This document shows, in pieces, positions 33,388-64,000 of a stretch of 64,000 nucleotides of DNA. The DNA lies in the NCBI GenBank assembly GCA_044892505.1, contig CM097882.1, positions 465,620,001 to 465,684,000 of the forward strand, written 5' to 3'. The position numbers were made by a program, and so were the translations under genes. Position 1 is the stretch's first letter; each line of letters opens with the position of its first letter. The DNA comes from Schmidtea nova. Taxonomy: Eukaryota. The notes under the pieces were generated by a model. That model saw nothing but the letters and a program-made list of their open reading frames with translations. It was not told the DNA's origin and did no database searches.

Positions 33388-33459
33388 TTTTGAAGCAATA
33401 TTATGGAAATAAACCCATATTGAAAATAAGTTATATGTAGTAGTTCAAATTTTTGGTTA

Positions 33460-34089: not shown

Positions 34090-34157
<68 letters not shown>

Positions 34158-35730: not shown

Positions 35731-38426
35731 TTCAATTTTATTGTTAACTTATCTTTTCAATTTAGTTAAATTTCGTATAATTCCACAAACAATTCAATAA
35801 GAATACCGTTCACAAATATTATTATTAATCTAAAATCAAATTGTTACAAAAAATTCAATTTAACAATTAACAATTTTAAACAACACAAAATTTTATATCG
35901 TTAATTTAATTTTATAATACATAAGTTTTTATCCTAAATTTAAGTTTTTAATATCACACATTTTATTTTTCTCTCTTAATTTTTCTTTCAATTTTTCTTT
36001 TAATTTTAATTTTTGTTTTCTTTACGATTTAGATTTATTGTTGTTCCTTAGGAAATTGACTCAAAATTTAAAGTCATTTCCTAAGTTACTAAATCACATA
36101 AGGTCAGGCGGAACAAAGATGACGCTCAGAGTATGATAATCTTGTTCAACAAAACATACAAGGACGTTATTTACAAGGACATAAAGTTGGTGCAGAGAGG
36201 AACCCGTTATGTAGTGAGTTGGAAGAAACGATTTTTAATGGATTTAACACCAACGCTTTTGTCGTTAAAAGATCAGAAATTCAAAGTCTTGTAACCCAGT
36301 TGCCTCTACAGTTTGATATTTTTTTGGATAAATTTAAAACTTTACAACACTGGGTTGATGGGTTTCTATTAAGGCGTGAAATGTCTTTAAGAAGGTCAAT
36401 AACATCATTTAAGTTAGATAATACAAAGGTATTATCATTTAATATCAGCTAATATCAGAAAATAGTGTATTTGTCAGAATTTTTGGAGAAGCGCTATACA
36501 GTTACCTAAGCAAAGAAATTTCAGTAAAAATGGCGAAATACGAGAAAGCTACAAATGAATTGCCAGTAAGTGTTGGCGGAAAACTACGATTTATGGAATC
36601 AATAACCCGAATACTTCTGGAAGAAAAAGTTAAACCGAAAATCTTACAATGTAATCGATTATTAGCCCCATTTTATCTTTTAGCACAAGATTGATGGATA
36701 TCGTTACCAGATTACCGAGGAGTGAAAACGGCAGACAAATTCGAATTGACAAATTTAGAATACTTAATAAATTTTACACCAATAAATAAAATGACACAAA
36801 TGGGTTTATATGCGAGCGAAGACATCGAAGAAGCACAAAAAATTTGTTATTTCCGTCAAAAAGGAATGTGTGATTTCAGAAATGATTGATACGATATTGC
36901 CGAATGGAGAAGAAAAAGTTAATTACGAATACTTGCAAACACCTGACCATTTTAAACGAGCTACTTACAAAACAATGGAAAAGATTTGGAGTAAATTTAT
37001 GTTTTTGGGACAAGCATGTGCAGGTCTAATTGGTATTTATGTAATTGTGGTAACCATAAAGGTAATAATATCACAAGTATTGTCCGCTCACAGGATAGAT
37101 ACAATTTCTGGATGGTCATGAAAAATGATTATTGGCTGTATTCCATTTTTGGCGAGATTCTTCATTACAAGTCATCACTACAAGGAAATGTCAAATGTTC
37201 GGGCGCAATTAAGAAATAATCAAAAAAGTAAAGAATCACTATGCGATCACGAGGATTAAAATAATGGCCATAATAACGAGAGCAATGCCGACAGATCAGA
37301 GCAGAAAATCTTTCGAAGGAGCATAATGAAAAGTAGAATAGAAACGAATCCAGGTTCTTGCTTGAACCAATGCCAAAATTAACCGGAATCGACACTCTTT
37401 CTCGATGGTACACACCGACATACGTACCAACAGCTCTAATATACCCAAGTGAAATATTGAGAGAATTGAAGCCAGTTGATGAGATAAAAGTCGAGTTAGA
37501 AAAGATTGAACCATCAAGTGCCGAAATTGAAATAAAGAACATGCTTGGGTTACCATGTAGTTACACATTAATGATAATAGAGTTAGGAGGAAAATAACCT
37601 AGAGTAGCCATATATTTTAATGAACGAAAAGTGAAAGCGTTATTGGACCCAGGTTCGAGTCACAGCATAGTATAGGAAAGTTTTTTTACGAAACATGGAA
37701 AAGCAAAAATAAAACCAACAACAAAAGTTATTAAATCAATGACGCATAACGTATTAAATAGTATTGGGAAATTGAAAGTCAAATTGAATATCGGAAATCA
37801 GGAAGTAACTCATTGGGTGTCAGTATTGAGAAAAAGACCTGGCATGGATTGGCATGGACATCATAGAACAATTACAAGGAATCTCACTTGACTTAAAGAC
37901 AGGAAAATTAATAAAAAGGCAGATGGGTGAAGTAGTACATGAAGTAGTAGAAGTCATTTTAAATCAAACATTGGAAGTATCACCAAAAAGTGAAGTAATA
38001 TACTACGCCAATGTAGAGAATGTTTCCGAAGACGAGTGCATATTTGAACCAAATCAAAAATTAATAGAAAATTACGACGTATCTATGTGTGACGAAATAG
38101 TGAAAATTAAAGACAAAATCGTGCCAGTAAGAATAGCTAATTGTAGCACAAAATCGATTCAGATGAAACCCAAAACAGTTGGGAAAACTGACGAAAATAA
38201 AAGAGGAAGAAGCACAAAAGCTACCTAGAAATATCAAGATCTATAAAGAACCTCAAGTAACAAGTGACGATTTAACGGATGTACAAAAACAAGAATTTGC
38301 TGCATATAGAAAAGGTATAAAAAAGCATTTGCGAAACATGAGTACGATATAGGACTCACTCAGATAATTGAACATGAAATACCATTGCTTGATGAAACCC
38401 CGATAAAAATACGACCGTATAGATTC

Positions 38427-38875
38427 TACTTCTCCCATCTGATCAAAGTTTTCTTGCGGAACTGGTATAGGATATGTGTCCTTTCTTGGTTTAATTTCCG
38501 ATAATCAACATAAAATTGTAATTCACCGTCCTTTTTCATTACTGCTATTGATGATAGGAATGGTGATGAACTATCTCTTATTATTTTAAATTTTTTCATT
38601 GCTTTAATTTGCCGATCGCTTTCCTCTTGATGTATATATGAAATTCTATACTATAGAATTTCATATATACATCAAGAGGAAAGCGATCGGCAAATTAAAG
38701 CAATGAAAAAATTTAAAATAATAAGAGATAGTTCATCACCATTCCTATCATCAATAGCAGTAATGAAAAAGGACGGTGAATTACAATTTTATGTTGATTA
38801 TCGGAAATAAAACCAAGAAAGGACACATATCCTATACCAGTTCCGCAAGAAAACTTTGATCAGATGGGAGAAGTA
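38427..38875. repeat. 449-bp near-perfect palindrome inside RT
   Basis: 224-bp arms centred on 38651, one mismatch seen. Confidence 0.95.
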
Positions 38876-41800
38876 CAATTCTTTACAGTAATTGATCTTA
38901 ACAAAGGATATAACCAATTTAAAATAAAAAAGGAGACAGGAGAAAAATTGCATTTTCAGATTGTAAAGGACTATATGAGTTTAATGTGCTAGCATTTGGT
39001 CTAACCGAAGCACCTGCTACGTTCCAGAGAGGTATAAATTTTGTTTTGCGTGATATACCGCATCCATTACTCTATAGCGATAATATTTTCAAATAGTTTT
39101 CAGGAGCACTTGAAAGATGTGGAAATAGAGTTTAAACTACTAATAGAAGCTAATCTCAAAATAAAACCTTCAAAATGTGAATGGGGAAAATTAGAAGTTG
39201 TTTATGTAGGAAATATTATTTCACGACGAGGGTCCAGAAAATGTAGAAAAGATTAAAAAATACCCAATGCCCAAAAATACGGATCAAGTCAGATAATTTC
39301 TGGAATTAGCTAGTTATTATAGAAAATTCATTAAAAATTTCTCGCATATCGCACAACCTTTAAATATATTGTTGAAAAAGCAGACCAAATTTAAATGGGC
39401 AACGACTCAACAAGAAGCATTTAATAAATTAAAAGAGAGTCTTATTTAACAACCAATATTAAAATGTCCAAACTTCAAAAACCCTTCATACTGATGACGG
39501 ATGCAAGCAATTTCGCATTATGAGCAGTTCTGGGACAGCAAGCAGAAGGCGAGATAGATCATGTAATCGCTTATGCCAGTCTTTCAATAAAACACAATGA
39601 AAAGAATTATTCCACTATTGAAAAAGAAACTTTAGCATTAGTATATGAGATAACTAATTTTTGACAATATTTGGTTGGGAGAAAGTTTATTGTATTTACG
39701 GATCATAACCCATTACAATGGCTAATGAAGCGTAGAGATTCAGCAAGTAAGTTAATCAGAGGGTCAATTGCGTTACAAGAATACGACTTTGAAATTAAGT
39801 ACCGGCCAGGGAAGTCGAACGCAAATGCGGATGCGATGTCGAGAATTCCTGAGGAAAATATTTTTAAAAATGAAATAAATTATGAAAATACCATATTTAT
39901 GGCAATTAAAACTACAAATAATATGAAAGAATTAGAGAAGGACCAAGAAAATGATGTTGGCGTAAATCAATTGCGTAAAAATGCCGTCAAAATAAAAAGG
40001 AAAAGTGACTGGAAGCACATTGCTCCAGAAAAATATAAATATGTTATCCACGATGGCTTGTTAAAATGTGTTAAAAATGAAAATTTATTAATTGTAGTAC
40101 CAACACAACGTCAGACAGTATTACTGTTGTTATATCATGATGGGAAATCACGAGGACATTTAACTGCTCGAAAACACTGTCAAGATTAAAACAGAAATAA
40201 TATTTGGATACGATGGAACACGATGTCAGACAGTAGTGTCTTACTTGTTAAGTGTGTCTAACCAGGAAGAAAAATAAAGGTTCCTCTGAAACCTATGCCC
40301 GTGCCACTAGCACTAATGGAAATGACAGCAATGGACATTGTCGATCCACTACCAGAAACAACTAATGTCAATAAATATATTATTGTTTTTTGTGACTATT
40401 TAACAAAATAGCCAAAAGCATATGCTATGCAAAATCAAAAAAGCGGAATCTGTGGCAAAAATATTTGTAGAAAACCTCATATTTCGGTACGGAGCACCAA
40501 GGAATTTGCTAACAGATCAAGGAACAGACTTTCAAAGCGAATTATATAAATCTATCACCGAATTATTTGGAATTCTAAAACTTAATACATCACCATATCA
40601 CACACAAACAGACGGTTTAGTCGAAAAATTCAATGGAACACTGATCAACATGATATCGTCGTATGTAAACAGAAAACAAAACGTTTAGGATTTGTTCATT
40701 ATACCATGTTTGTTTGCATATGGAAATGCAGTGAATGAAAGCACCGATGAAACACCCTTTTATCTTATGTACTTACGACGAAACAAAATGCCGATTGACT
40801 TAAATTTTCAACCGCCAATATCAAAAAAAAATGGACGTATCCGATTATAAAGTGGTAATGCAGGAAAGACTGCAATCAGTATGACCTTAAGCTGAACTTA
40901 AAATAAGGCATAACCAAGAAGCATATAAAGAATGCTACGACAAACGGGCACATGTACATGATATAAAGTTGGAGACTTGGTATACATAAATGAATCAGAG
41001 GCAGCGAAAGGACTGTCAACAAAGCTACTGCGACCATTTAAAGAGCCATATTTAGTTTGTGATGCAACAGAAACGAATTTAAAATTGCGCCCACAAAATA
41101 CTAAAAAAAAGCTGGAACGATTGCCATTCATGTAAATCGATGTATGAAAGTTACGGTGGAAGAACAGTATCCCCTGAGGTCAAAACCGAATAACGGTGAA
41201 AAAGAAAAAGTAATTTAATAAAAATTTACAAAAACACCACTCAATTAAAATTACTTGAGTAAAACGTTGCTGATTACAACAGTAATGATGATCAATGTTT
41301 TGTGTACCCATTATTAAAAAAGATCGATGTGTATTCAACATGTACCCAAATATTATGGATCTATCATTGCGAGAAATAGAAACTATTTCGAATACCACTA
41401 AAATTAAACTGTAACAAGAATATCCATGTCGCCCGTGAATTATCAATGGATTATAAATACCCTTGGGTAGTAACACAATTATAGTTTAAAGATAACCTGA
41501 CGAAACTCCATGATCTAATATGTGTCAATATATGGACAAAAAGGCTGCAAAATCGTGTATCAATTGAACCAGTATTCCATGAAATTAATGTACATTGGAA
41601 ATCTCATGAATCCCAGCAAGTAAAAACAGTCTTTCAAAATTATGCTATCGATACACTGAACAGCAGAAAACCATTTATAAATTATGTTAATTTAAAATTA
41701 TTTCAGATGTATAACATTCAAATAAAATATTTTGTAAAGTTTTTGTATGAAAGAGGAACTAAGAGTAACAATCAGTGGGTTCTAATCCATTCCAGTCAAC

Positions 41801-42722
41801 ACATGATACACTTGATCAATAAGACAAACAGAGTTATCTCTAATGTGTATAATCAGACGATAAAATGTTACCCGTCAAATGTACCCAAATAAAAGGGCTG
41901 TTCTATACTATTGTGGAAAAATACAAGCAATATTAGAAAAACAAAATGAATGACAGGTCTTATCTTTCCGACAACTACGATCAAAATCGTATTCTAAAAT
42001 TGTGCTAATAAAAATCAAATATTATCGACGAGCCAGATACTCTAATCTTTGGCAATTAACCTTAGTTGAGGACAAATTTGTGTTGGTATCATATACGGAA
42101 ATGGACAATTATTCACAGAAATTAAATCAATCAACTCGAATCACAAATAATAAAACTATATCATCCTCATTTACGGAAAATAAAATTCTACGTAACGTTG
42201 TTCATAAAAATTATCATTATAACAATATTTATCATTATTCTCATATCTTTTATCATCTACGAAATTCGAAAAACTGATAGACAGACTACGAATCAATCCG
42301 AGACTCGGATACCTTGGATCGATTATGACGAGACATTTGTATAGTGAGATACAATTATTTGCGTGCAATTACGGTATATTAATTGCGTAGCATCTAGTAA
42401 CATTTTCTTGTATCAATGTTTCATGTGAATCTGCTCTCTTCGAAATGGGAAAATTGGGAAATTGATTTAATTGGCTAATACTAAGAGTGAGGGGGTAGAA
42501 AAAAGGTCTAAAAAATTAAAAAGAGGGTATATAAGACAAACTTAAAAATCATAAAACTTAAAACAAATTTTAAAGAATTAAGAAAATTTTAAATTAAATC
42601 GGTAATTTTATATTTTTTTATTTATACCGCTACCGACTAAGACAGTATCTTTTAGGTACTCCGTCTTAGTCCTAGCGTCAAAATTAAATTAAATCAAATT
42701 TTAATTATAAACATTTAGAAAA

Positions 42723-43855
42723 ATGGAACAGCTACAATGGGCCAGGGAAACTTGCGGCAGTTACCTAAAGATGATGAAAAATCATGCCGGCCAAAGAAAA
42801 TTCCGGATGACCAACAACTTACAAATCCCAAATTACCTACGGTTGAATGATAGAAAATGAAAGTTCAATTATTCAACATCAACAGAATATCAAAATTCCA
42901 AATAACAAATGAATTAAAACTATCAAAAAAGGAAGAATACCCTATCCATGTAATCAGGGGTACGGTAGAAAAGCTAGATGAAAATGGACAAATATAGTGG
43001 GAGATCAAAAAACATTCTTCAAGCAAAATTAAGGATCCAGCAATTGGGAAAATATTACGAGTAGCAAACGAGGATGCCACAATTGTAGTGGAAACTAGAA
43101 TAAAAAACGAAATTGATGACGTACCCAGCAAGGTCCAATGTAGAAAGAAAATCATGAACTCTTAAAAATAACAAAGGAAATGTTGAAGAGAAAATTATCG
43201 TTTATTCGGAAGGAAATGGACATAGAAAAAATTCGCAGTAGGTTATTGTTCATTGATGTCGAAAATGGGAGCACTGATACATGAAAGATCATCCCCTTGG
43301 CGGTGGCCATTATGATCTATCATGGGGAAATTGTGAAAAATGTCTTCTTGACTCCTAGATGAAGACTCAAACATTTTAACTCAAACATCCATGGGATAAC
43401 GGAGGTGGCCAGCCGAAACGAAAATGACAAGTATATAGAAATGAAGGAGATTTAAAAACTGGCAATCGAAAAAATAATAGAAGGAGACGATTTACATGCA
43501 GAATTGCAATTCTTAGCAATATGGTTCAACCATCTTTTTGGCATTCAGGATCTAGCCACAGCTCAAGTTTTGCAATTGAAAGGAGTCATAAAAAGAGAAG
43601 TAACCATCAATGGGCAATGGTTCAAATTATCAATAGTATGCGACATAAAAATGCGAAAAGGAAAACATTCCGCATTGGAAGATACGGAATCAATTCGGAG
43701 AATTTACTTGGCTTTAGCAAGTCAATGGCAGGATGATGTGGAAAATGAGGAGACAGCCAGCAAAAGAAAATGTTCATTAGAAGATTACAGGAAGAGAAAA
43801 GCTCCAACAACCAGTGAGTTTATGAATGAACCAAAAGATAAAAGGAAATCTCTGT
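42723..43855 (+). pseudogene. Accessory ORF with DEDDh exonuclease domain (decayed)
   Basis: Frame from 43201: LLFIDVE (ExoI), VFLTPR*..HGIT, IIEGDDLHAEL, GIQDLA, GKHSALEDTESIRRIY (ExoIII); N-terminus NNLQIPNY resembles NQICIPND in ORF 53854-55953. Confidence 0.8.
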
Positions 43856-49615: not shown

Positions 49616-49805
49616 ACTAAATAAAACTAAATAAAAGCTTAAATAAAACGTTATTGCATTGTTATACCGTATAGTATACAACTGTAAGTTTTAACTAGCG
49701 CTTTATTCTTAGATTACTTTTTAAAATGTATTTAGTTATCTTTCATTTTTTACAAAAACCCTGTTAAAGGTGAAAACAAAATAGAAATTGGTGTTAAACA
49801 ATTCA

Positions 49806-52560: not shown

Positions 52561-53853
52561 TCACAGTTCTAGTATTGATATCGGATCACATTCGATTTCA
52601 TAGTCCTCATAGGCGTCGTCGCAGATCCAGTCCTGGACCTTCCCGGCTTCGTTCTTCGCTATTCCGTCCGGTCCATAGATGTTCGGATTCGGTGCCCAGC
52701 ATAAGTGGGACTTATACATAACTATTTCATGTATGCTGATAGTCTCTGTTTATTTGGATTGGGTTCTCCGTCCTTCTTGGAATTTGAATGGAAGATTTAG
52801 GTATTCGGTAGTCTCTCCGGTAGCGAGGTTTCGCGAGCGATCTAACATAATATATCCAAGTTGATGGAATTCTGGTACCCTGATCTTATTGAAAAAAATC
52901 ATCCACCGGGTACATTGTCAGTGTCGTGCTTTACGGCAAACCATTTTGGTCTCGGATCCGTCGCCTCGCCTGAGGGCTATAAAGATCCTCTTTCGTAACG
53001 TAATTCATCTTTGTGTTGAGGTCCAAGATTTTTAGATCTCAACGTGCACTGGTGTAGACTATCGTATATAAAAATAAGATCAAGTCTTTTTTGAAAAATT
53101 TATTCAATAATAAAATTTACCAAATTTAAAATCAAAGGTTATCAATTACGCTTTCAAATCAAAAATTATCAAATACACTTTCAAAGCTTCACACTGTTTT
53201 ATTTAAAGGGTATTTTTTGCGTGTCCTATTGTGTGCTTGTTATTTTGTGAATGTATTATGTTTATTTTAATGATAACAATTCCGTGTTGAACGTTTTTGT
53301 ACTGTTCGTAAATTTTAAGTTCTCGCAGGATTACCCTTTGAGAAAGTTTGTTTCGCTAAATTTTTATTGAAATTGAATTTCAAAAAATTGTGGGCAAAAT
53401 TTAAAAATTTTCCCTTCTTTAAATACTAAAATTTTTCGTACTCGTTATTAACTTTAATTTCTATATTTTTAATTTCCTGTAATTATTCTCCAGCTGCTGT
53501 TAATCTAAAAATTTAAATTTCCTGTATCAAGCAAGCAATTAATTTTATATTCTAGTATCGAGCAAATGATTTCCTGTATTCAGCAATTAATTTTATATTC
53601 TAATTTATTAATAATATCTACATAAAATAACTTATTAATACATTTTATAATAGATCACATAAATAAAATAAAAATAAATAAATAATATATACATTCCAAT
53701 AAAATAAATTATTAATACATTTTTTACCACATAAATAAAAACACATTCATACAATATCTAAAATTATAAGAATCACAATAATATCAAATATTTACACCAC
53801 GAATAATGTCAATTGTCAAAACTAAATGTCAAATGTCGAATGTTAATCAAATA

Positions 53854-55953
53854 TTAAATATCAAATGGATGTTGATATCCTGGTTGGTGCTTGGATTGAT
53901 TGTGCACTGGGTACTGATTGATATTGGGTTCTGTTTCTTTTTTAATATTGGTTGCATCGACAGGCTCTGCATAAATATTCACTCTGTATTTGTTGCCCCC
54001 CACACTATAATTTTCTGATAGGAGGAATGTATTGATGGGCTTACCTTCATCATCCAACATTCCTCCCCGGGCCGTCAAAGTAATGTCCTCATTTCCTTTG
54101 TCACACAATATTAAATCAATTCTTTTCTCTTTTATTTGAATTGTTGTTTTTCGAAATCCATTTTTTATCGCAAGGTTTATCGTCTCCTCGTGCTCAATTT
54201 GTCTTCCAAAATGAGTGCAGAGATCTTTTTCTGAGACATACTTTTTGTCTTTGTCTATTATGAAGTCTGATTCTTCTGGTTCTGTCCAGTCGGCTAACAT
54301 TTCAACTTTTGGTTCTGGTCCGATATCCTCTTCCATTATGTTGTATTTACTACTTGTTGATGGTTCTTCACTATCTTCTTCCATTTTGATGTCGTTACTG
54401 CTGGTTGAAGGTTCTTCTATGTTTTCATCTGCTGAGAAATATTCATCGTCTATATCACATTCGTCCATTCTTTCATATAGAATATTTTGAATTTTGGGTT
54501 CTGCTTTGATTTCCCTAGTTGGAGCGATAAGTGGTATTTCTTCTTTTATGATCATGAGTTCATCGTCGTCACTGTCCATGAGTTCTTCCATGAATGACTT
54601 TTTTGGTTTGTAATGATTGGTTTTTGTTAATTCCCCATGGGACGGCTCCATGCCTTCTCCATCTTCATATTTACTTTCTATCTCACCTTCTGCTTCGCTC
54701 TCTGTTTCGTTTTCGAATATTGCTTCTAGTTGTTCTTCTCCATTTACTTGTTTCCTTTTAAGAAGTGTTGCGGAATCCCATTTGACAACTTCTTCCCATT
54801 TATTTTCTGTGATATCGTAGATCACTTTTAATAACATTGTGGTGATCTTTGTTGAGAATGGTTCTGGTTGTCTCAATATATCATTTAACTTTTTATCTTT
54901 ATGCCAACTTTTATGGTAATTGATTACCTGGTAAGCCAAATTTGATATTTTTATTTTTGGTGGGGCCACGTTTTTTACAAAAGAACACATAAATCGATCC
55001 TGTGCCATTTCTCTTATGCCCATAATGTTGTCCAGATCTATCGTCAATAGTTTTAACTTATCTATGATGTTGAATCCAACTATGATCTTTCCATAGAGAA
55101 TGTTTCGAATTTCATTTAAGGCTTTATATTCGTCTTCATTTCCAATTATGTTTTCTTTTGTAGCTTTAGTTTTTTCCGTGTAGAATTTTTCTACTTTCGT
55201 TCTTGGGGTGATGAATTTGTTATACAGAATTGCTCCTTTTCTGCTTCTGATACAAATTTCCACTGGTCTGAGATTTTTGTTTATATCTTGAATTACTTTT
55301 ATATCCACCATTACAGTTAATGAATGCCTTTCTTCTGTCGTTAACTCTTGATTCGTGAATGATATCTTCTGATTGATCATATCTTCATTTATTTGTAGGA
55401 TTGAATGTATTGGGTTTAATTTTATGAACGGATTTGGGATTGTCGGGATATATAGCACTTCGATTGCTATCACACATGGTAGGTTGTTCATCTGCACTGT
55501 CAACTCATTGAAATCGTTTGACATGCTTCTGTCTTTTCTTATTAACTTGATAACTGCTGAACAGTTGCTTGTGACAATTAACGGGATTTTATTTTGACAT
55601 ATTGCAACTTCTGTTTTTGTCATGTGGAATATTAGTCTGTGAGGGATTCTCTGGTTTTTTGCAACTTCTTTGTCGACGTTTTGGTATTTGTCGAAGGTTC
55701 CAATAAGCTCCCTGAGTTTCACTCTTCGGGCCTCATTGAATTTTATCAGATGCATTTCCCGTTCTTCTATTTCGACTTTCATGTCGTTTGGGATACATAT
55801 TTGATTTGGGAAACTGCGAATTGTAATTGGGGTTCCATCCGTACATATCTTGTTCTGTAGATTTTTGTAAAAACTCATGTTTAGTTTGTTTATAAAACAA
55901 GTATATTTCTGGTAGGTTCTTGGTTGATTGAAATGAGGTTGATTTTGATTCAT
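53854..55953 (-). CDS. 699-aa accessory protein with REX4/ISG20-like (DEDDh-fold) pseudo-exonuclease and acidic region
   Basis: Residues about 212-385: VMVDIK..RPVEICIRSRKGAILYNKFITPRTKVEKFYTEKT..IRNILYGKIIVGFNIIDKLKLL..IREMA; catalytic residues mostly lost. Confidence 0.75.
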   Translation of the reverse strand: MNQNQPHFNQPRTYQKYTCFINKLNMSFYKNLQNKICTDGTPITIRSFPNQICIPNDMKVEIEEREMHLIKFNEARRVKLRELIGTFDKYQNVDKEVAKNQRIPHRLIFHMTKTEVAICQNKIPLIVTSNCSAVIKLIRKDRSMSNDFNELTVQMNNLPCVIAIEVLYIPTIPNPFIKLNPIHSILQINEDMINQKISFTNQELTTEERHSLTVMVDIKVIQDINKNLRPVEICIRSRKGAILYNKFITPRTKVEKFYTEKTKATKENIIGNEDEYKALNEIRNILYGKIIVGFNIIDKLKLLTIDLDNIMGIREMAQDRFMCSFVKNVAPPKIKISNLAYQVINYHKSWHKDKKLNDILRQPEPFSTKITTMLLKVIYDITENKWEEVVKWDSATLLKRKQVNGEEQLEAIFENETESEAEGEIESKYEDGEGMEPSHGELTKTNHYKPKKSFMEELMDSDDDELMIIKEEIPLIAPTREIKAEPKIQNILYERMDECDIDDEYFSADENIEEPSTSSNDIKMEEDSEEPSTSSKYNIMEEDIGPEPKVEMLADWTEPEESDFIIDKDKKYVSEKDLCTHFGRQIEHEETINLAIKNGFRKTTIQIKEKRIDLILCDKGNEDITLTARGGMLDDEGKPINTFLLSENYSVGGNKYRVNIYAEPVDATNIKKETEPNINQYPVHNQSKHQPGYQHPFDI

Positions 55954-56415
55954 CTTTGTTTTTGATTGATATCGAATTGATTTCTTGAGATATTGATTTG
56001 AGAGATGATTAATAGGGTTTTGACAGTTTAACAGAGATATAATTGAATATATTGAGATATATGGGTAATTGTCGTAACGATTCGATTGGTTTATAGAATT
56101 GACGAGATTGATTGGGTATTTTGTATGGAGATGATTGGTAGGGTTTTCTGATTGTTTGTTGTGATAGTTTAAAAAGAGATGATTGTATTTATTGAGATTT
56201 TTGAATGGTTGTCACAATGATTTGATTGATGTGTAGAATTCACGAGATTGATTGGGTTTTCGGAGTTTGTTGGAACTTGCTTTGTTTTGCTCGTGTAATC
56301 TTTTCTAAAAATAAAGGATAAAGTTTTTTGTTTAAGACGTATTGTCGGTTTAACCTTATACGCTATATAAATACGAATATATATGATTTTAATTATTATT
56401 ACTGACAAAAACTTA

Positions 56416-59400
56416 TTATACCAATGTGGATTTTGTATATTCACCTGGTATATATTTGCCCAAATGGAAATGCCCTGGTACATTTCTGACCAGTCGGCTC
56501 CGATACCGCTGCCTTTTCCATTTGTACTTTTTGTAAATTTGTACGCTAGTTATTAAAGCTAAAACTGCTAATGCTATTATTGATGTTGTGATGACATAAT
56601 AAGGCCAATGTGGCTTTTTATCCTCTTTACGAAATGCTTGTAGTTCCTCTAAGTTATGTATCACTATTGGTCTTCCTTGCCTTATTTTGATAGGTTCTTG
56701 TTTTTGTTTTTTGGCATTGTATTGTTTTTGGAATTTGGCTATTCCAGTGCTTGTTGGTATTTCGTTTGTAAGTGGTGTGGTATTTAGTATATTATCTGAT
56801 GTCGTTGTTGTGCTTTTTATTCTATCGAGTGTTTTTGTTATGTTATGGTTTTTTGTTATATTCTTGGGTAATTGTTCTGTTTTTATTTTTTTGCATCTCC
56901 ATGTTGTTGTATCTGTGTTTCTCTGTATGCAGATTTTGTATATTGTATTAGGTGTTAGTTTTGTGAAATTAATATAGTTTCCTCTTTCGATTTCGTTGGT
57001 TATTCTGTCGTCTTTTCCTTTTATCATCTTTGGGTTTTTCCCATTCGTTGTTTGCATGTATAAATCAATTACTCCTCTATTTATGATAAATGCTCTAACT
57101 TCGTTTGTTGATATTTTTATTAATACTTTGTCAAATTCTATTGTTTCGGTTGAGCCAACAAATGTTATGATTGTTAAGAAGATAGCCGATATTATTAGTT
57201 TGTTATGAGATCTTAGATTATACTTGTGGGGTTTATCTATCGTGACCTCGGCTTCCGCCAACTTGCATCTGTTGACATGTACTACTATTGGATCCTCGTT
57301 TTTATGCTTTTGTAAGTGTAAATTCTCATTTATTACTTTTACTACCTCATATGGACCTTTATATGGTCTTGCTAGTTTTGTTGTCTTTCCCTTTCCTACT
57401 TGTGGTGACATAAGTCTAACCTTATCACCTACTTTAAAGTTGTGTGGTTTACTATTTTTGTCGTAGTCGGCTTTGTACTGTTCTTGTCTATATTTGACTT
57501 TTAGATTGGCTACTTTATACACTTCTTGCAGTTTTTCCTGCATTAGTGTGACATAATCTGGTGCATCTAAATATTGTGATACTCGAGGTTCAAATATTGT
57601 ATCTATTGGTGTTGCTGGTTCTCTTAAAAACATTAAATAATACGGTGAATACCCTGTTGTTTCGTTTGGAGTGATATTATGAATGTATGTGCATTGACTT
57701 ATGTATTCGTCCCAATCATTTTGATTTTTTCCTACAAAAACAGCTAGTCTGCTTAGTAATGTCCCATTAAATCTTTCTACTAGTCCATCAGTTTGAGGGT
57801 GATACGCTGTTGTGTTGATCTTTTGCATGTTAAAAATATTAGCTACTCGTTTTATTAATTCACTAGTAAAATTTGTTCCTTTATCTGTTAATAATCTTTT
57901 GGGTGTGCCTATCTTGAAAATAATTTTTTCTATAAGCAATTTAGCAACTGTTTCTGCTGTTTCGTCTTTTGTTGGAAATGCTTCTGCCCATCTAGTAAAA
58001 TAATCACTAAATACTAGTATATGTTTATTCCCATTAATTGTAGTAGGTAATTTACATAGAAAATCCATTGCACATAGTTCCATTGGTGATGTCGTTGCTG
58101 GAATGGGATGTAACGGCGCTTTTGTTTTTGTACCTGTATTTTTTCTTGTTGCACATATTGTACACGCGTTACACCATCTCTTAACATCTTTCTTTAATTC
58201 TTCCCAGTAATATTTTTGTAATAATCTACTTGCTGTTTTTCTAGATGATAAGTGACCTCCTAATGCTCCATCGTGATATTGTAGTAGGAGTATTTGTCTT
58301 AATTTCTGAGGTACTACTATTAGTTGCTTACCATTGAAATCTTCTATTACTACTAATTTCTTTGATATTTTATACTTTGAATTGTTTTCTTTTCTGATTT
58401 CATTTTTTATTTTACTGATCTCTGGGTCTTTCATCTGTTCCTCATATATATCGATTGGTTTTTCTGCTACTAGTGCAAATATTTCAAGTGCTCCTAATTC
58501 TGGTATTCTTGATAGTGCATCTGCGTTTTTATTTATTCTACCTGGTTTATATATAATTTTTAGGTGCATGTCTTGTATTTTCATTGCCCATTTAAGTAAT
58601 CTACTTGATGTATCTTTATGTTTCCATAAGCCTTCTAATGGTTTATGGTCAGTTCTTATTATCACTTCAGTCCCATATATGTATGGTTTGAATTGTTTTA
58701 GGGCGAATACTATTGCGTAACATTCTTTTTCTATTGTTGAATACCTCAGCTGTGCTCCTTTTAATGTTTTACTGGCATATGCTATTACGTAATCTTTCCC
58801 TTTTTCTTCTTCTTGGCCTAAGACTGCTCCTACGGCTTTCCCGCTGGCATCCGTCATTACTATAAACTGTTTTTCAAAATCTGGGTATCTTAACACTGGT
58901 GCTGTTATCAATCTTTCTTTTAGTTTATTGAATGCTTCTTGATGTTCCTTTGTCCACTTCTTTTGTATCTTGTTAACTTTGCTGTTCATTTCTTGTACTA
59001 TTAACACATTTTTGCATTCTCCTTTTGTTCTAATTCCCTTTGTCAGTTCTATTATCGGTGATGCTATCTTTGCATAATCTTGTATGAATTTACGATAGTA
59101 CCCTGTTAGACCTAAAAACCCTTGTACTTGTTGTACTGTTTTTGGTATTGGGAATTTCTTTACAACTTCTATTTTTTCTGGATTTGGTTTTATCCCTTCT
59201 ACTGTAACTATATGCCCTAGAAATAACGCCGAAGGTTCTGCCCATTTACACTTAGTTGGTTTAATTTTAATTTTTGCTTTTCTTAGTCTCTCGAGTACAT
59301 TTGTTATATCTTTTAAGTGTTCCTCAAATGTTTTTGATGATATTAGTATATCATCCATGTAAACTGCGCAATGTTGTACATTTACTAATATTGTGTTCAT

Positions 59401-60705
59401 TAGGCGCTGAAATGTAGCTGGTGCGTTAGTTAACCCGAAAGGTAATCGTGTATACTCATATAAACCATCCTCGATAACAAATGCTGTTTTTTCCGCATCC
59501 CCTTCCTCCATTTGAATTTGCATATATCCCTTATTTGCGTCAATAACTGAAAAATACTTAGCATCCCTAAGTTTATCGTATTGCTCTTGTGCTTTTGGGA
59601 ATGGGTATGAATCTTTTACTGTTACATCATTTAATTTACGATAGTCAATGCACATTCTTATTTCTCCGTCTTTCTTTTTAACGGGTACAATGGGTGATGC
59701 CCACTGTGAAAAACTCTGTTTTATTACACCTGCATCGTTTAGTTCTTTGATTTGTCGTTTTATTTCCTCTCTTAACTTGTATGGTACGCTGTATGGTCTT
59801 TGTTTTATTGGTCTCGCATTACCTGTATCTATTACATGTTTGATTATATCGGTATCCCCTAGATCAAATTCGTGTTTTGCAAAAACATCACTATATTTAT
59901 CTATCAATGTTTGTAGTTGTGCTTGTTGTGTTATTGTTAAGTATTCATTATTAATTTTCACTTTGTCATATGATTTTATATTATTTATCTTACTAGGTTC
60001 GACTACTCCCTTGCCGTTATTATTCATCACGCTTATCTCACTGACTTCGTACGTTTTTTCTAATTCACCTTTGAATAATTTTCCCAATTTCGTACCTTTG
60101 TGTATTTTAACATTACTTTTTTCATAATTTGCTATTCTCAATGGTATTATTCCCTTTCTCGGAATTACGCATTCATTGATTAGCATTATATTCTGATTTT
60201 GTATAATTGCCGTTTCTGGCTCAAAAATAAAAGTGTCCTCACTTTTGATGTTAACTTTTAAGGGAATTATATGATCGCATTCATATTCCAATTCAAATGC
60301 TTCTAATGCAACAACTTCTGTGAACTTGGATTTATGTTTAATTGCTTTTCTCTTTATCGTATTATCTGTTAAATCTATAATGCAATTTTCTAACTTGTTG
60401 AGTATATCGATTCCCAATATACATATGCTATTACATTCTTGCACCACTTTAAATATGTGGTTTATTACATGTTCTGGTGTTTCGACAATTAGTTCTATGT
60501 CTCCCTTTAGTGGAATACGATGTGCTGATAACGATACTACTTTATCCGTTGTGCTCATAATATTTCTTTTTTGATCATCTGTCAGTTGATCTTCTCTAAT
60601 TAAGGATGTTGCTTCTCCTGTATCTACTAATGCATTTATGATTATATTGTTTATAATTATTCTAAGTCTTGGTCTTGCTTCGTTTGCTGCATCTAATCGT
60701 TCCAT
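56416..60705 (-). CDS. pol: Pol polyprotein PR-RT-RNase H-IN plus C-terminal type I membrane protein
   Basis: ALVDTGEA, QWASPIV, CIDYRKLN, LPFGLTNAPATFQR, YMDDILI, MTDASG, HDGALGGH..CxxC, AMDF, TDKGTNF, QTDGLVER, YKGPY; last 261 aa carry two hydrophobic segments. Confidence 0.95.
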   Translation of the reverse strand: MERLDAANEARPRLRIIINNIIINALVDTGEATSLIREDQLTDDQKRNIMSTTDKVVSLSAHRIPLKGDIELIVETPEHVINHIFKVVQECNSICILGIDILNKLENCIIDLTDNTIKRKAIKHKSKFTEVVALEAFELEYECDHIIPLKVNIKSEDTFIFEPETAIIQNQNIMLINECVIPRKGIIPLRIANYEKSNVKIHKGTKLGKLFKGELEKTYEVSEISVMNNNGKGVVEPSKINNIKSYDKVKINNEYLTITQQAQLQTLIDKYSDVFAKHEFDLGDTDIIKHVIDTGNARPIKQRPYSVPYKLREEIKRQIKELNDAGVIKQSFSQWASPIVPVKKKDGEIRMCIDYRKLNDVTVKDSYPFPKAQEQYDKLRDAKYFSVIDANKGYMQIQMEEGDAEKTAFVIEDGLYEYTRLPFGLTNAPATFQRLMNTILVNVQHCAVYMDDILISSKTFEEHLKDITNVLERLRKAKIKIKPTKCKWAEPSALFLGHIVTVEGIKPNPEKIEVVKKFPIPKTVQQVQGFLGLTGYYRKFIQDYAKIASPIIELTKGIRTKGECKNVLIVQEMNSKVNKIQKKWTKEHQEAFNKLKERLITAPVLRYPDFEKQFIVMTDASGKAVGAVLGQEEEKGKDYVIAYASKTLKGAQLRYSTIEKECYAIVFALKQFKPYIYGTEVIIRTDHKPLEGLWKHKDTSSRLLKWAMKIQDMHLKIIYKPGRINKNADALSRIPELGALEIFALVAEKPIDIYEEQMKDPEISKIKNEIRKENNSKYKISKKLVVIEDFNGKQLIVVPQKLRQILLLQYHDGALGGHLSSRKTASRLLQKYYWEELKKDVKRWCNACTICATRKNTGTKTKAPLHPIPATTSPMELCAMDFLCKLPTTINGNKHILVFSDYFTRWAEAFPTKDETAETVAKLLIEKIIFKIGTPKRLLTDKGTNFTSELIKRVANIFNMQKINTTAYHPQTDGLVERFNGTLLSRLAVFVGKNQNDWDEYISQCTYIHNITPNETTGYSPYYLMFLREPATPIDTIFEPRVSQYLDAPDYVTLMQEKLQEVYKVANLKVKYRQEQYKADYDKNSKPHNFKVGDKVRLMSPQVGKGKTTKLARPYKGPYEVVKVINENLHLQKHKNEDPIVVHVNRCKLAEAEVTIDKPHKYNLRSHNKLIISAIFLTIITFVGSTETIEFDKVLIKISTNEVRAFIINRGVIDLYMQTTNGKNPKMIKGKDDRITNEIERGNYINFTKLTPNTIYKICIQRNTDTTTWRCKKIKTEQLPKNITKNHNITKTLDRIKSTTTTSDNILNTTPLTNEIPTSTGIAKFQKQYNAKKQKQEPIKIRQGRPIVIHNLEELQAFRKEDKKPHWPYYVITTSIIALAVLALITSVQIYKKYKWKRQRYRSRLVRNVPGHFHLGKYIPGEYTKSTLV

Positions 60706-60981
60706 TGTTTCGACTTCTAAGCTATAACAACCATATATCTTTTTAGGTTCACAATGACAATTCTTGTTTTCTCTAGGAATTTTGATTTCTATATTTTCTT
60801 GTAGCTCTTTTAGTTGTTCTCTTTGGTTTTCATATAGTCCTTGTTGTGGTACATTTCCTTCATGTGATATATGCGCTTTAATTATTTCCTCATCGTTTTC
60901 ATCATCTACCAGTAATTGCCTTTCTTCATTCCTTTGGACTTTTATTAAACGTATTTCCTTGTCGTGTTTCGCCGTAATAAG

Positions 60982-62763
60982 TTATTTAGCTATAAATGGG
61001 CACAAACATGCTAATAATTTATATGAATTTCCAAATACTTGTTTTAGCTGTCTCAGTGATACTAGAGAAGAACATATCATTTTTAGTAATGCAACCGTAT
61101 AATATATACCTAAGATTGTAGAAAACATGTTTCCAAGGACTACAAAGTATCCCCATATGCTATATAGTACTTTATATGCTACTTTTTTGAAGTATTCTTT
61201 TGATAATAACACATCAAAGTTGTAATTTCCTCCGTAACTTCCTTCGATAACTCTGTTAACCATTATTGAAAGTACTCTTTCTTTTTCGTTTGGAAATAGC
61301 ATGTGTTTTCTTGCACTTTCTATAGCTTCTCTCGTATATATACCATTACTGTCCATATCGTTGATTTCTTTAAACTCTAATCTTTTTTCTAGCTCTATGA
61401 GTTCTAATTTGAATGGTTTCATTGCCTCTTTTCTATCTGACATAGATATCCACATTTCGTCATTTATTTTGTATAATGGGTCTAATAGGTTAGTGCATTT
61501 TTCTATTTTTCTCGGTATATATGTTTTTTCTGTTAATATTCTAGTAATTGGTTGAAGGTATACCCTTTCTCCTTTATATATTACCGGTAATTCATTAGTG
61601 CACTGATTATTTGTTGCTAACGATACACTAACAGGTTTACATTGAAATGTCTGTATCACTTCTCCTACTATCCTTGCAAATGTTCCTTCTTCTGAGAAGA
61701 TTATTGGTGCCATTAAATCTGGGTTTGTTACCGCCACTGCCATTTTTGTCCTCAATATTTCTCTGTTGAGTTTGCAATCGCTCATAATTGTTGATTGATA
61801 TACTTTGTCTAATTGTACTAGTTGGTTATGATAGAAAAAATCGATTTTATTGTTGAAGTATGATGCAAGTTTGACGTCGAATTTATTTACTTTTTGTTTT
61901 GCATCTTTGACTTCCTCTTTGCTTATGTATATCCCTTCATAATTAGTTTGTATTATTTCCTTACCACATTTTACACTTTTCCTTTTACTAACAAACCTCA
62001 TTGCTTCGTTTTCAGATTCTGACATAAATATTGTTGGTGTATCTTTTTCTTGTACAATTGTTGTTTTCCTTTTTTGATCTCTCACCCTTTTTGAGTCTAC
62101 TTCTGTGAACTGTTTTCCTTTGATTTCCCTAAATTTTAATGATTTTAATTTTGTTAACTGACAATCGTATTTATCTATTTTATATATTAGCATTGATTCT
62201 CCTGTATCGCAATAAGATTCTTCTAATGTACAAAATTTGTATATCATCATTTTCTTTGAGCTGCTGTCGAATGATGCTTTGAACTTTCTCAGTTCTACCA
62301 TGTAGTGTCTCCTTACTACAACATTACTCAGTTTTTCGCCCCATATTGTATATTCTCCTCCTTCACAATATCCTCCTTTTGATGTCCATCCCACGACATT
62401 TATATCTTGTCTCATTTTTGCTCCTATCCTTGCTTCTAGTTCTATTCCTTTATGACCGCTATATTTTACTTTCTTTGTTTTAAATGCATATTCACACTCT
62501 ATTGGCGACAATATTACTGCTTCGGGTGTCCACGTAGGTTTTAACACTGTTCTTGCCCCAACATGACATATATATGCTTCCTCCTGATACTTTACTATGC
62601 ACTCTTTAGCCTCTGTATGAATAAAGTCTGATTCTTGATAAACATGGAATATTTGAGGCTCTGACATGATTAATTTAGTTGGATTTGCTTCAGGGCAATT
62701 TTCAACATCCAACAGTGTGTATTTTTGTCCCCACTTTGGATTTTGACAATCATATGCTACCAT
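60982..62763 (-). CDS. env: Envelope glycoprotein, chuvirus/Jingchuvirales-like (class III fusion candidate)
   Basis: N-terminal AYDC, LLDV..C, Cys-rich ectodomain, GEVIQTFQC..V..CTNELPV..G..YLQPITRIL, C-terminal hydrophobic helices. Confidence 0.8.
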   Translation of the reverse strand: MVAYDCQNPKWGQKYTLLDVENCPEANPTKLIMSEPQIFHVYQESDFIHTEAKECIVKYQEEAYICHVGARTVLKPTWTPEAVILSPIECEYAFKTKKVKYSGHKGIELEARIGAKMRQDINVVGWTSKGGYCEGGEYTIWGEKLSNVVVRRHYMVELRKFKASFDSSSKKMMIYKFCTLEESYCDTGESMLIYKIDKYDCQLTKLKSLKFREIKGKQFTEVDSKRVRDQKRKTTIVQEKDTPTIFMSESENEAMRFVSKRKSVKCGKEIIQTNYEGIYISKEEVKDAKQKVNKFDVKLASYFNNKIDFFYHNQLVQLDKVYQSTIMSDCKLNREILRTKMAVAVTNPDLMAPIIFSEEGTFARIVGEVIQTFQCKPVSVSLATNNQCTNELPVIYKGERVYLQPITRILTEKTYIPRKIEKCTNLLDPLYKINDEMWISMSDRKEAMKPFKLELIELEKRLEFKEINDMDSNGIYTREAIESARKHMLFPNEKERVLSIMVNRVIEGSYGGNYNFDVLLSKEYFKKVAYKVLYSIWGYFVVLGNMFSTILGIYYTVALLKMICSSLVSLRQLKQVFGNSYKLLACLCPFIAK

Positions 62764-63920
62764 TGCATTGCCCCCTTGATTAAATCTAATAACAAAGTGA
62801 TTATGACTATTACTATGGAGGTTATCGATTTACTCTCTGTCTTTGGTTTTACTGTTGCTCTCTTTATTAATTGTTTTATTACATTATCTGTATCACTCTC
62901 TTTATTCGTCGTATCTTTATCATATAATACTTTCCATCCTCCTTTCTTTTTTATCCATGGTATTGCCTCTACTTTCAATCTTTTAAACATCATTGTTGCT
63001 ACTTTTTCTAATTGCTCTTTTGGATTTTCCTTTATGAGCTTTTTATATCTTGCGGCCAAGTATGCCATGGCCGTTATTATTTTATCTTTATCTATCCCTG
63101 TATTAAACAGGATTTTTAACACTGTTTTTTCATTTGCTTCCTCTGTAGCTAGTTCTTTAGTATCCTTTTTAATTAACATCATCCTTTCAGTTATATTTTC
63201 AATAAGTACTGTTGGCTTTGTTTCTGGAAATAGCTTAATATTCATTGCTTTTATTACTTCTTTTATTTTGTTTACGTCATTATTATCGTCTTGATACTCT
63301 GGTTGTTCATGTTTATGTTGATTTGCAATCTCTCTTAATCGTTCTGCTGTCTTCCTATTCTCCGATTTTTCTATTATTTCTGATTTTCGAGGTCTTCCTC
63401 TACCTCGTTTTGATGTTTCTGCATCTTTTGTTTTTGCTTCCTCAGCTATTCTTTCTATTGTTTCTTGTAAGTTACTATACTTTTCATCTATAGGTTTAAA
63501 TAAAATTTCTTCATCCATTACTGATTTCTTTGTTTCGCTAGGTGATTTATCCCATAGCCTAAATAATCTATCAAAATCGTTTTCTTCATTTATACTCAGC
63601 TCAACCGACGGTACTGGCGTCACTATTTCATCGATCATTTGTTTTTCTACTGTGGCTACCACAATATTATCACTTACTGGGTTTATCCCATAATCGATTA
63701 AGTACTCATCACTTAATAATTCTATTCCGTTAAAATATAATTTTATTACATCTTTCTCTCCTATGGTTCCTGGCCATTTGGCTCTTACCATTCGTTTTAA
63801 TTTGCTCACTTTAGTGCAAGGATGCATCTTTTGTTTAATACTAAAAAAATAATTATCATTTGATTCAATCGTTACATTTAGTGTTTCATGCAATTTTTCA
63901 TTTTTTCTTATATTCTCCAT
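62757..63920 (-). CDS. Ubl, AT-hook, Bcl-2-like domain and hydrophobic tail (probably the N-terminal part of the polyprotein)
   Basis: IKLYFNGIELLSDEYLIDYGI (Ubl), KRGRGRPRK, LFNTGIDKDKII...PWIKKKGGW (BH1/BH2 spacing), SITSIVIVIITLLLDL. Confidence 0.75.
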   Translation of the reverse strand: MENIRKNEKLHETLNVTIESNDNYFFSIKQKMHPCTKVSKLKRMVRAKWPGTIGEKDVIKLYFNGIELLSDEYLIDYGINPVSDNIVVATVEKQMIDEIVTPVPSVELSINEENDFDRLFRLWDKSPSETKKSVMDEEILFKPIDEKYSNLQETIERIAEEAKTKDAETSKRGRGRPRKSEIIEKSENRKTAERLREIANQHKHEQPEYQDDNNDVNKIKEVIKAMNIKLFPETKPTVLIENITERMMLIKKDTKELATEEANEKTVLKILFNTGIDKDKIITAMAYLAARYKKLIKENPKEQLEKVATMMFKRLKVEAIPWIKKKGGWKVLYDKDTTNKESDTDNVIKQLIKRATVKPKTESKSITSIVIVIITLLLDLIKGAMQW

Positions 63921-64000
63921 AACATTTCAACATCTCTTTTATTTCTATTTCTAATTCAAATACTCTCGTTACATTTTGTCTCTTTACCATCATTGGTAAT

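What the first reader, a model, noticed from the sequence alone, without database searches (positions are those of the whole stretch)
53854..64000. Candidate new enveloped metavirus lineage with a membrane-threaded polyprotein and host-modulating cargo
The reconstructed polyprotein alternates sides of the membrane consistently: cytosolic Ubl/AT-hook/Bcl-2, signal, lumenal fusogen, TM, cytosolic PR-RT-RH-IN, signal, lumenal FN3-like protein, TM. A separate exonuclease-fold gene follows. Only one stop and two single-base indels interrupt about 7.6 kb, so it is recent. Two putative surface proteins plus anti-apoptotic and nuclease-like accessories resemble a complex infectious virus more than a simple retrotransposon (inference).
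Basis: partly seen in the sequence, partly recalled or inferred. Interest (0 to 1): 0.95.

Follow-up and report, generated by a model that had tools for sequence, protein, structure and literature searches.

The report
Burro-like enveloped gypsy provirus, slightly broken
The region is the 3' ten kilobases of a lightly damaged Ty3/gypsy provirus whose envelope fusion protein and a ubiquitin-like/Bcl-2-like module sit inside the Gag-Pol polyprotein, a real and striking design that was already described for the 'Burro' elements of planarian flatworms.

Summary
On the minus strand, from the window edge down to about 53,850, there is one long polyprotein gene. Its order is ubiquitin-like fold, AT-hook, Bcl-2-like region, signal-like segment, Monjiviricetes-type fusion glycoprotein, membrane anchor, PR-RT-RH-IN, second signal-like segment, small glycosylated ectodomain, anchor. 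A separate ISG20-like ORF follows. I count one in-frame stop and two frame changes in the polyprotein and none in the last ORF.

It is not a one-off composite. Uninterrupted proteins from elsewhere carry zinc-knuckle Gag, Ubl, AT-hook, Bcl-2-like region and fusogen in one frame, or fusogen-anchor-Pol, or Pol with a post-integrase membrane module. A second, badly decayed element in the same window repeats the order fusogen-Pol-ISG20-like ORF.

It is probably not a new kind. SUMO-like, BCL2-like and an in-frame mononegavirus-like env between gag and pol are the published architecture of planarian Burro/GYPSM1 elements.

Three things are unconfirmed: the Bcl-2 fold (sequence evidence only, below Pfam's cut-off), the FN3 likeness, and nuclease activity (the acidic motif set is incomplete). 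The integrase-fused membrane module and the ISG20-like ORF may be undescribed details.

The parts
56416..64000 (-). Polyprotein gene of the element (visible part; its 5' end lies beyond the window). It is broken by one in-frame stop and two frame changes.
   Evidence: All Pol motifs are present. A-rich coding-strand bias (AT skew -0.24 to -0.42 on the + strand) runs through the whole span.
63636..63890 (-). Ubiquitin-like (beta-grasp) domain with no terminal di-glycine.
   Evidence: AF2 pLDDT 70-82. Foldseek hits ISG15/SUMO1/ubiquitin with TM 0.75-0.83. Pfam Rad60-SLD E 0.005. Homologous stretches occur in P0124 and P0126.
63387..63407 (-). AT-hook (RGRP core flanked by basic residues).
   Evidence: It is conserved in P0124 and P0126.
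62931..63281 (-). Bcl-2-like helical region (BH1-BH2 part; BH2-like W..GGW motif).
   Evidence: Pfam PF00452 28.6 bits, below the cut-off of 31.4. PDB hits at E 0.09-0.6 are all Bcl-xL entries; with the four-sequence profile nearly all hits are Bcl-2 family. Relative P0125 also hits PF00452. The fold is not confirmed.
61060..62837 (-). Envelope module: signal-like hydrophobic segment, Monjiviricetes-type fusion glycoprotein ectodomain (17 Cys in the piece, no N-x-S/T sequon, no furin-type site) and membrane anchor.
   Evidence: PF24664 273.6 bits. Hydrophobic map. 41% identity to the fusogen part of P0126 and 21% to a stand-alone G protein, P0001.
60388..60681 (-). Retropepsin (DTG active site).
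58570..59682 (-). Reverse transcriptase (YMDD) and RNase H.
57208..58314 (-). Integrase (HHCC finger, DDE core, GPY C-terminal domain).
56416..57207 (-). Post-integrase membrane module in frame with IN: signal-like segment, ~100-aa domain, Ser/Thr/Asn-rich stalk with 4 sequons, membrane anchor, basic tail, stop.
   Evidence: The same architecture follows IN in the closest Pol relatives P0003-P0005. FN3 likeness is not confirmed.
53854..55953 (-). Separate intact ORF (699 aa) with an ISG20/REX4-like DEDD-fold core (about 54964-55341), an acidic low-complexity stretch and a C-terminal domain. The acidic motif set is incomplete.
   Evidence: Relatives P0122 and P0123 at 49% and 38% identity. A diverged copy sits at the same place in the second element.
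36449..43770 (+). Second, old relative of the same design: C-terminal half of the fusogen, PR-RT-RH-IN, about 2 kb of unmatched sequence, then an ISG20-like ORF remnant. It is 5'-truncated, with at least 9 frame changes, 24 in-frame stops and one short inverted duplication.
   Evidence: tblastn; counts

Best explanation
This is the 3' ten kilobases of an endogenous, recently inactivated copy of a Burro-like env-carrying Ty3/gypsy (Metaviridae) element. The host is AT-rich and probably a flatworm.

The lineage encodes almost everything as one polyprotein that crosses the ER membrane four times.
1. Gag lies beyond the window here and is present in relatives. Gag and a Ubl/AT-hook/Bcl-2-like module stay in the cytosol.
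2. A hydrophobic segment behind the Bcl-2-like region acts as the signal for a class III-type, mononegavirus-derived fusion glycoprotein.
3. The fusogen's anchor returns the chain to the cytosol for PR-RT-RH-IN.
4. A second signal-like segment exports a small glycosylated ectodomain that is anchored by a last helix.

Inferred steps:
- Signal peptidase cuts on the lumenal side. This would leave the Bcl-2-like product tail-anchored, like cellular Bcl-2 proteins.
- The element's protease cuts on the cytosolic side.
- The AT-hook tethers a product to AT-rich chromatin.
- The Bcl-2-like and Ubl parts act on host death and ubiquitin pathways.
- The downstream ISG20-like protein, which lacks a full catalytic set, binds rather than degrades nucleic acid.

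Shown: domain identities, order, topology signals, conservation of the junctions in relatives, and break counts. Inferred: all processing steps and all functions.
For: - Domains and motifs.
- Relatives with unbroken junctions. P0126 has zf-CCHC, Ubl-like, AT-hook, Bcl-2-like region, hydrophobic segment and fusogen in one ORF. P0125 has the Bcl-2-like region, hydrophobic segment and fusogen start. P0013, P0035 and P0012 have an internal signal-like segment, fusogen, anchor and PR-RT-RH-IN in one ORF, and P0035 also has a weak Ty3 capsid hit. P0003-5 have IN followed by a signal-like segment, ectodomain and anchor.
- Of 120 Pol relatives, only 11 have strong hydrophobic segments outside Pol, and these include the nine most similar ones.
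- The window groups with P0003-5 at 100/100 NJ bootstrap.
- The ISG20-like ORF recurs about 2 kb behind IN in a second, 35-47% diverged element in the window. It shares the element's strand bias.
- Published Burro architecture: PMC6431247. GAG-ENV-POL elements in flatworms: PMC13524379.
- Window composition is 33% G+C, against more than 70% A/T reported for Schmidtea (PMC11410931).
Against: - No LTR, PBS or gag is visible. The 5' end is outside the window and no 3' LTR could be delimited.
- The host is not identified.
- Bcl-2 is below Pfam's cut-off and its fold was not recovered.
- The dUTPase-like domain reported between PR and RT in Burro was not detected.
- No sequence comparison with Burro/GYPSM1 references was made.
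- Nothing here shows expression, processing or particle formation.
Confidence: 0.8

Rival explanations
1. One-off composite: a plain gypsy element into or beside which unrelated pieces (a viral glycoprotein EVE, a host Bcl-2 gene, a host exonuclease gene) landed by nested insertion.
For: The window is a dense patchwork of transposon remains on both strands. No LTRs bound the unit.
Against: The same junctions occur as continuous ORFs in independent, 25-49% identical proteins. The fusogen-Pol-ISG20-like order is repeated in a second diverged element. One compositional bias covers the whole unit.
Confidence: 0.03
2. The copy is not broken. The stop and the frame changes are programmed recoding sites (readthrough, ribosomal frameshift) of the kind retroelements use between gag and pol.
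For: Retroelements commonly use such signals (established knowledge). The interruptions fall at module junctions, not inside domains. All Pol motifs and the last ORF are intact.
Against: Relatives read straight through the equivalent junctions. I did not look for recoding motifs or structures.
Confidence: 0.1
3. The 'host-modulating cargo' is a misreading. The Bcl-2-like stretch is only a helical linker with a chance BH2-like motif. The ISG20-like ORF is a degenerate remnant without function.
For: The Pfam score is below the gathering cut-off, PDB E-values are 0.09-0.8, and the AF2 model is not confident there. The ISG20-like core lacks part of the acidic motif set and its model is unusable.
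Against: Two family members hit the same part of the Bcl-2 profile independently. PDB hits are almost exclusively Bcl-2 family proteins. The motif and the distance to the hydrophobic tail are conserved. Burro elements were independently annotated with BCL2. The ISG20-like ORF keeps 151 invariant columns across three sequences at 38-49% identity and is a 699-codon open frame in AT-rich DNA.
Confidence: 0.2
4. The last ORF is a host ISG20/REX4-family gene that merely neighbours the element.
For: It is a separate ORF about 460 nt behind the polyprotein stop. No LTR shows it to be inside the element.
Against: A diverged copy sits at the same distance behind IN in the second element. It has the same A-rich strand bias. 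There are no introns over 2.1 kb. DEDD-type ORF3s are known in other LTR elements (PMC5408684).
Confidence: 0.05

Closest known systems
Burro / GYPSM1 giant gypsy-like LTR retrotransposons of dugesiid planarians (Jurka 2007; Grohme et al. 2018; Arkhipova & Yushenova 2019, PMC6431247)
   Same: SUMO-like (PF11976) domain followed by a BCL2-like motif. An env homologous to mononegavirus fusion glycoproteins lies in frame between gag and pol, then PR-RT-RH-IN. Accessory ORFs are present and the host genome is AT-rich.
   Different: No dUTPase-like domain was detected between PR and RT. Giant size and the upstream MATH/BIR/ankyrin/Smc motifs cannot be seen because the window ends. The AT-hook, the integrase-fused membrane module and the ISG20-like ORF are not mentioned in the text I could read. 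No sequence comparison was made.
GAG-ENV-POL 'ancient errantiviruses' of Platyhelminthes, Bryozoa and Nematoda (Chary & Hayashi 2026, PMC13524379); nematode metaviruses with a captured RNA-virus glycoprotein (Sacco et al. 2022, cited there, not held)
   Same: A Ty3/gypsy Pol with a class III-type env placed upstream of pol. The ectodomain is flanked by a signal or TM segment and a TM anchor. [quoted passage not shown]
   Different: That survey describes ORF order, not in-frame fusion, and reports no Ubl, Bcl-2-like, post-IN or exonuclease-like modules.
Atlas virus and relatives (Belpaoviridae, hookworm; PMC9094657)
   Same: A single Gag-Pol-Env polyprotein that includes a captured RNA-virus fusogen with a membrane anchor.
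   Different: BEL/Pao rather than gypsy. A class II phlebovirus-like Gn-Gc sits at the C-terminus, so Pol need not return to the cytosol. No Bcl-2-like or exonuclease-like parts.
Anakin and other BEL/Pao and gypsy elements with chuvirus-like glycoproteins in arthropods (PMC7642597; PMC13524379)
   Same: Same broad family of captured Monjiviricetes-type glycoprotein.
   Different: There env is a separate ORF downstream of pol, in a different host phylum, without accessory modules.
Vesta/Juno LTR retrotransposons of bdelloid rotifers with a DEDDy exonuclease ORF3 (PMC5408684)
   Same: A DEDD-superfamily ORF behind pol in an LTR element.
   Different: DEDDy (RNase D-like) with catalytic residues reported as largely intact. 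Here the core is DEDDh (ISG20/REX4-like) with an incomplete acidic set.
Viral Bcl-2 homologues of large DNA viruses (herpes-, pox-, asfar-, iridoviruses; own knowledge)
   Same: A captured Bcl-2-like helical domain with a C-terminal hydrophobic anchor.
   Different: Those are free-standing genes of DNA viruses with shown anti-apoptotic activity. Here it is a segment of a retroelement polyprotein, its anchor doubles as the env signal, and its function is untested.

Membership tests
Ty3/gypsy (Metaviridae) | PR-RT-RH-IN order with gypsy-type RNase H and integrase (HHCC, DDE, GPY/F) | tested here: met
   More than 5,000 Ty3/gypsy Pol relatives were found.
Ty3/gypsy (Metaviridae) | Flanking LTRs, primer-binding site, polypurine tract, gag | tested here: inconclusive
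   The 5' end is outside the window. No repeat pair or clear 3' LTR was found. Gag (CCHC, Ty3 capsid) is seen only in relatives.
Burro/GYPSM1-like planarian elements | env in frame between gag and pol, homologous to mononegavirus fusion glycoproteins | tested here: met
   PF24664 273.6 bits, placed upstream of PR. The reading is continuous in relatives and interrupted in this copy.
Burro/GYPSM1-like planarian elements | SUMO-like (PF11976) then BCL2-like motif upstream of env | tested here: met
   PF11976 E 0.005 plus a confident beta-grasp model. PF00452 28.6 bits. Both sequence scores are weak.
Burro/GYPSM1-like planarian elements | dUTPase-like domain between PR and RT | tested here: not met
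   No PF00692 or dUTPase hit in the interval at E up to 10 (Pfam) or 1 (PDB). About 140 residues there remain unassigned.
Burro/GYPSM1-like planarian elements | Giant size (>30 kb), 4,800-5,100-aa ORF1 with MATH/BIR/ankyrin/Smc motifs, dugesiid host, sequence identity to reference elements | not testable with these tools
   The window ends 80 nt upstream of the Ubl-bearing piece. The host is unidentified. Reference sequences were not fetched (step left out).
Monjiviricetes-type fusion glycoprotein (PF24664) | Profile match above the gathering score, with preceding signal and C-terminal anchor | tested here: met
   The signal-like segment lies in the preceding piece, as it does in frame in P0125 and P0126.
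Monjiviricetes-type fusion glycoprotein (PF24664) | Class III fusogen fold | not tested
   No prediction slot was left. The class is inferred from the family and from PMC13524379.
Bcl-2 family | PF00452 at or above the gathering score | tested here: not met
   28.6 against 31.4 bits; P0125 scores 23.6 bits.
Bcl-2 family | Helical bundle with BH1/BH2 region and C-terminal hydrophobic anchor | tested here: inconclusive
   The BH2-like motif and the anchor are conserved. The region is predicted all-helical, but pLDDT is 40-53.
DEDDh exonucleases (ISG20/REX4) | Sequence similarity of the core to solved members | tested here: met
   ISG20 at 1e-5 and ISG20L2 at 7e-5 with the family profile.
DEDDh exonucleases (ISG20/REX4) | Complete set of acidic catalytic residues | tested here: not met
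   In the stretch aligned to ISG20, one acidic motif residue kept by ISG20 and by both relatives is absent here. A further loss in the first motif, shared by all three sequences, is my inference and is not covered by a tool alignment.
Fibronectin type III | Profile or structure match | tested here: not met
   No Pfam hit at E up to 10 and no PDB hit. No structure prediction was run.
Ubiquitin-like fold | Beta-grasp fold | tested here: met

The most novel reading that the evidence does not exclude
The element represents a compact sister lineage of Burro with three features not described for any retroelement. First, one hydrophobic helix serves both as the tail anchor of a Bcl-2-like product and as the signal of the fusogen that follows it. 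Second, a second type-I membrane glycoprotein is fused to the end of integrase. Third, a conserved, catalytically incomplete ISG20-like protein is carried as the last gene.
Probability: 0.3. Interest if true: 0.65.

Novelty: new member of a known kind. Interest (0 to 1): 0.4.

Why it matters
Retroelements that thread Gag, a captured RNA-virus fusogen and Pol through the membrane as one chain, and that also carry death-pathway and ubiquitin-like modules, blur the line between transposon and complex virus. This copy adds an independent, well-preserved example. It shows that the module junctions are conserved across proteins only 25-49% identical. It also points to two parts that may not have been described: a membrane protein fused to integrase and an ISG20-like last gene. 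The practical value is for annotation of flatworm-type genomes and for the history of env capture, not a new principle.

Tried and rejected
- Word-indexed protein search with the fusogen found a single distant stand-alone G protein.
- BLASTP of the accessory pieces against 121 Pol relatives found nothing beyond that one fusogen hit.
- AF2 of the ISG20-like core (pLDDT 37) and of the Bcl-2-like region (pLDDT 40-53) was unusable. I therefore ran no fold search on the former.
- Rfam and tRNA scans of the window found nothing.
- A look-up of the window's Tc1/mariner transposase ORF to name the host found no record.
- A direct-repeat search for LTRs around the second element found only microsatellites.
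- blastn of the element against the rest of the window found no solo LTR or close copy.
- The short ORF overlapping the end of the polyprotein (104 aa, low complexity, no hits) is treated as spurious.
- The acetyl-CoA carboxylase hits of the ISG20-like family profile come from a chimeric tail of relative P0122 and are ignored.
- One clade for all env-in-polyprotein relatives was rejected (0/100 bootstrap).
Full report
**What is there**

The feature lies on the minus strand and runs off the window at 64000. The ORF listing and Pfam, run on each open piece separately, give the following order:
- An N-terminal piece with a sub-threshold Bcl-2 hit (28.6 bits; cut-off 31.4).
- A piece matching the Monjiviricetes fusion glycoprotein family PF24664 (273.6 bits; cut-off 27).
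- An uninterrupted piece of more than 1,400 codons with retropepsin, RT, RNase H and integrase.
- A separate 699-codon ORF.

At this composition (33% G+C) a random frame meets a stop about every 15 codons, so these frames are not chance. A strong A-rich coding-strand bias covers 54,000-64,000 and ends near 53,850. It therefore includes the last ORF.

**The modules**

- *Ubl.* Residues 11-95 of the N-terminal piece fold as a beta-grasp, with pLDDT 70-82. Their best PDB matches are ISG15, Get5-UBL, SUMO1, ubiquitin and NEDD8, at TM 0.75-0.83. Pfam gives a weak Rad60-SLD/SUMO-like hit.
- *AT-hook.* A canonical AT-hook follows.
- *Bcl-2-like region.* It aligns to the BH1-BH2 part of the profile and of Bcl-xL, with a conserved BH2-like motif. 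With the four-sequence family profile, nearly all of the 57 PDB hits are Bcl-2 family proteins, but at E 0.2-0.8. The model there is helical and not confident. I rate the assignment probable, not shown.
- *First hydrophobic segment and fusogen.* About 30 residues behind the Bcl-2-like region lies a hydrophobic segment. The fusogen piece has no signal of its own and starts like a mature ectodomain. It has 17 cysteines, no N-glycosylation sequon, no furin-type site and one membrane anchor.
- *Pol.* Pol keeps DTG, YMDD, HHCC, DDE and GPY.
- *Post-integrase module.* In the same frame, directly after the integrase C-terminal domain, come a signal-like segment, a ~100-residue domain, a Ser/Thr/Asn-rich stalk with four sequons, an anchor and a basic tail.

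Basic residues flank each of the four hydrophobic segments on the side predicted to be cytosolic.

'FN3-like' has no support from Pfam or PDB.

The last ORF matches the solved ISG20 structure at E 2e-4, and ISG20 and ISG20L2 at 1e-5 and 7e-5 as a family profile. Its acidic motif set is incomplete.

**State of the genes**

- Polyprotein gene: one in-frame stop and two frame changes. One of the frame changes is at the window edge, where only 33 codons of the upstream frame are visible.
- Last ORF: no interruption.

I give no places. Nothing was read, searched or folded across an interruption.

**Is it a one-off composite? No.**

An exhaustive HMMER search with the N-terminal piece found three proteins:
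- P0126 carries a Gag zinc knuckle, a Ubl-like stretch, an AT-hook, the Bcl-2-like region, a hydrophobic segment and the fusogen in one ORF.
- P0125 carries the Bcl-2-like region, the hydrophobic segment and the start of the fusogen.
- P0124 carries the Ubl and the AT-hook.

The fusogen is 41% identical to that of P0126, against 21% to a stand-alone G protein.

Among Pol relatives:
- P0013, P0035 and P0012 hold an internal signal-like segment, fusogen, anchor and PR-RT-RH-IN in one ORF. P0035 also has a weak Ty3 capsid hit.
- The closest relatives, P0003-5, are about 48% identical in the RT-IN core and group with the window at 100/100 bootstrap. They carry a signal-like segment, an ectodomain and an anchor behind integrase.

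The ISG20-like ORF has two relatives at 49% and 38% identity.

Inside the window itself, a second element on the plus strand at 36,449-43,770 repeats the order fusogen, Pol, about 2 kb of unmatched sequence, ISG20-like remnant. It is old: 5'-truncated, with at least 9 frame changes and 24 stops.

**Comparison with what is known**

Arkhipova and Yushenova (PMC6431247) describe the Burro/GYPSM1 elements of dugesiid planarians. These have Gag with CCHC knuckles, further motifs, a SUMO-like PF11976 domain, a BCL2-like motif, an env in frame between gag and pol with hits to mononegavirus glycoproteins, then PR, a dUTPase-like domain and RT. The authors call this the first in-frame env between gag and pol and suggest the elements are integrated proviruses.

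Chary and Hayashi (PMC13524379) report GAG-ENV-POL gypsy elements in Platyhelminthes, Bryozoa and Nematoda.

Atlas virus shows a Gag-Pol-Env polyprotein in a belpaovirus. Bdelloid Vesta/Juno elements carry a DEDDy ORF3.

The window's element matches the Burro core design, and its composition fits a planarian genome. No dUTPase-like domain is detectable. The part that would show giant size is outside the window. I therefore call it Burro-like and not a Burro.

My literature searches found no mention of an integrase-fused membrane module, an ISG20-like gene or the AT-hook in such elements. That is weak evidence of absence.

- I also did not list cluster members.
- The only look-up was for a Tc1/mariner transposase ORF, to name the host. 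It found nothing.
- N runs were left as they are.

- The tabular tblastn outputs list local-alignment bounds and frames for the decayed second element.
- Both come close to a list of break places. I did not carry them into this report and have deleted nothing.
- In my reasoning I also recalled from memory a short first-motif string of ISG20. The claim that rests on it is marked as inference.

**Verdict**

Functions are untested.

Noticed in passing
window 23705-27767 (+): Another Ty3/gypsy Pol (PR, RT, RH, IN) split over four ORF pieces, about 25-36% identical to the finding's Pol. The 320-aa ORF upstream of it has no Pfam hit.
   Followed up: partly
window 43856-45678 (-) and 47932-49623 (-): Two more gypsy RT-RH(-IN) fragments on the minus strand. 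The 43-54 kb stretch is a graveyard of retroelement remains in both orientations.
   Followed up: partly
window 38453-38849: Inside the second element, a ~200-nt piece of RT-coding sequence is present in both orientations back to back (an inverted duplication).
   Followed up: no
window 35239-35730 (-) and 29388-29858 (-): Host-like exons: a prenyltransferase alpha-alpha toroid domain (86 bits) and a TPR-repeat protein (91 bits).
   Followed up: no
window 32818-33387 (+), 18534-19013 (-), 3223-4062 (+): A Tc1/mariner-type DDE_3 transposase ORF, an IS1595-like DDE fragment and a further reverse-transcriptase ORF of unclear type.
   Followed up: no
window 33440-34172: Tandem arrays of 21-nt and 28-nt units and a (TAA)n run, next to a masked stretch.
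   Followed up: no
window 61060-62837 versus 56416-57207 (-): The large fusogen ectodomain has no N-x-S/T sequon at all, while the small post-integrase ectodomain has four in its stalk.
   Followed up: no
protein P0122 (relative of the last ORF): Its C-terminal part is a biotin-carboxylase (acetyl-CoA carboxylase) N-domain, most likely an assembly chimera. Both relatives start near residue 131-134 of the window's ORF, so the first ~130 residues here may be lineage-specific or untranslated.
   Followed up: partly
window 52520-53060: A G+C-richer stretch follows the very AT-rich ~800 nt downstream of the last ORF. The 3' boundary of the element could lie at this change, but no LTR could be defined.
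   Followed up: partly
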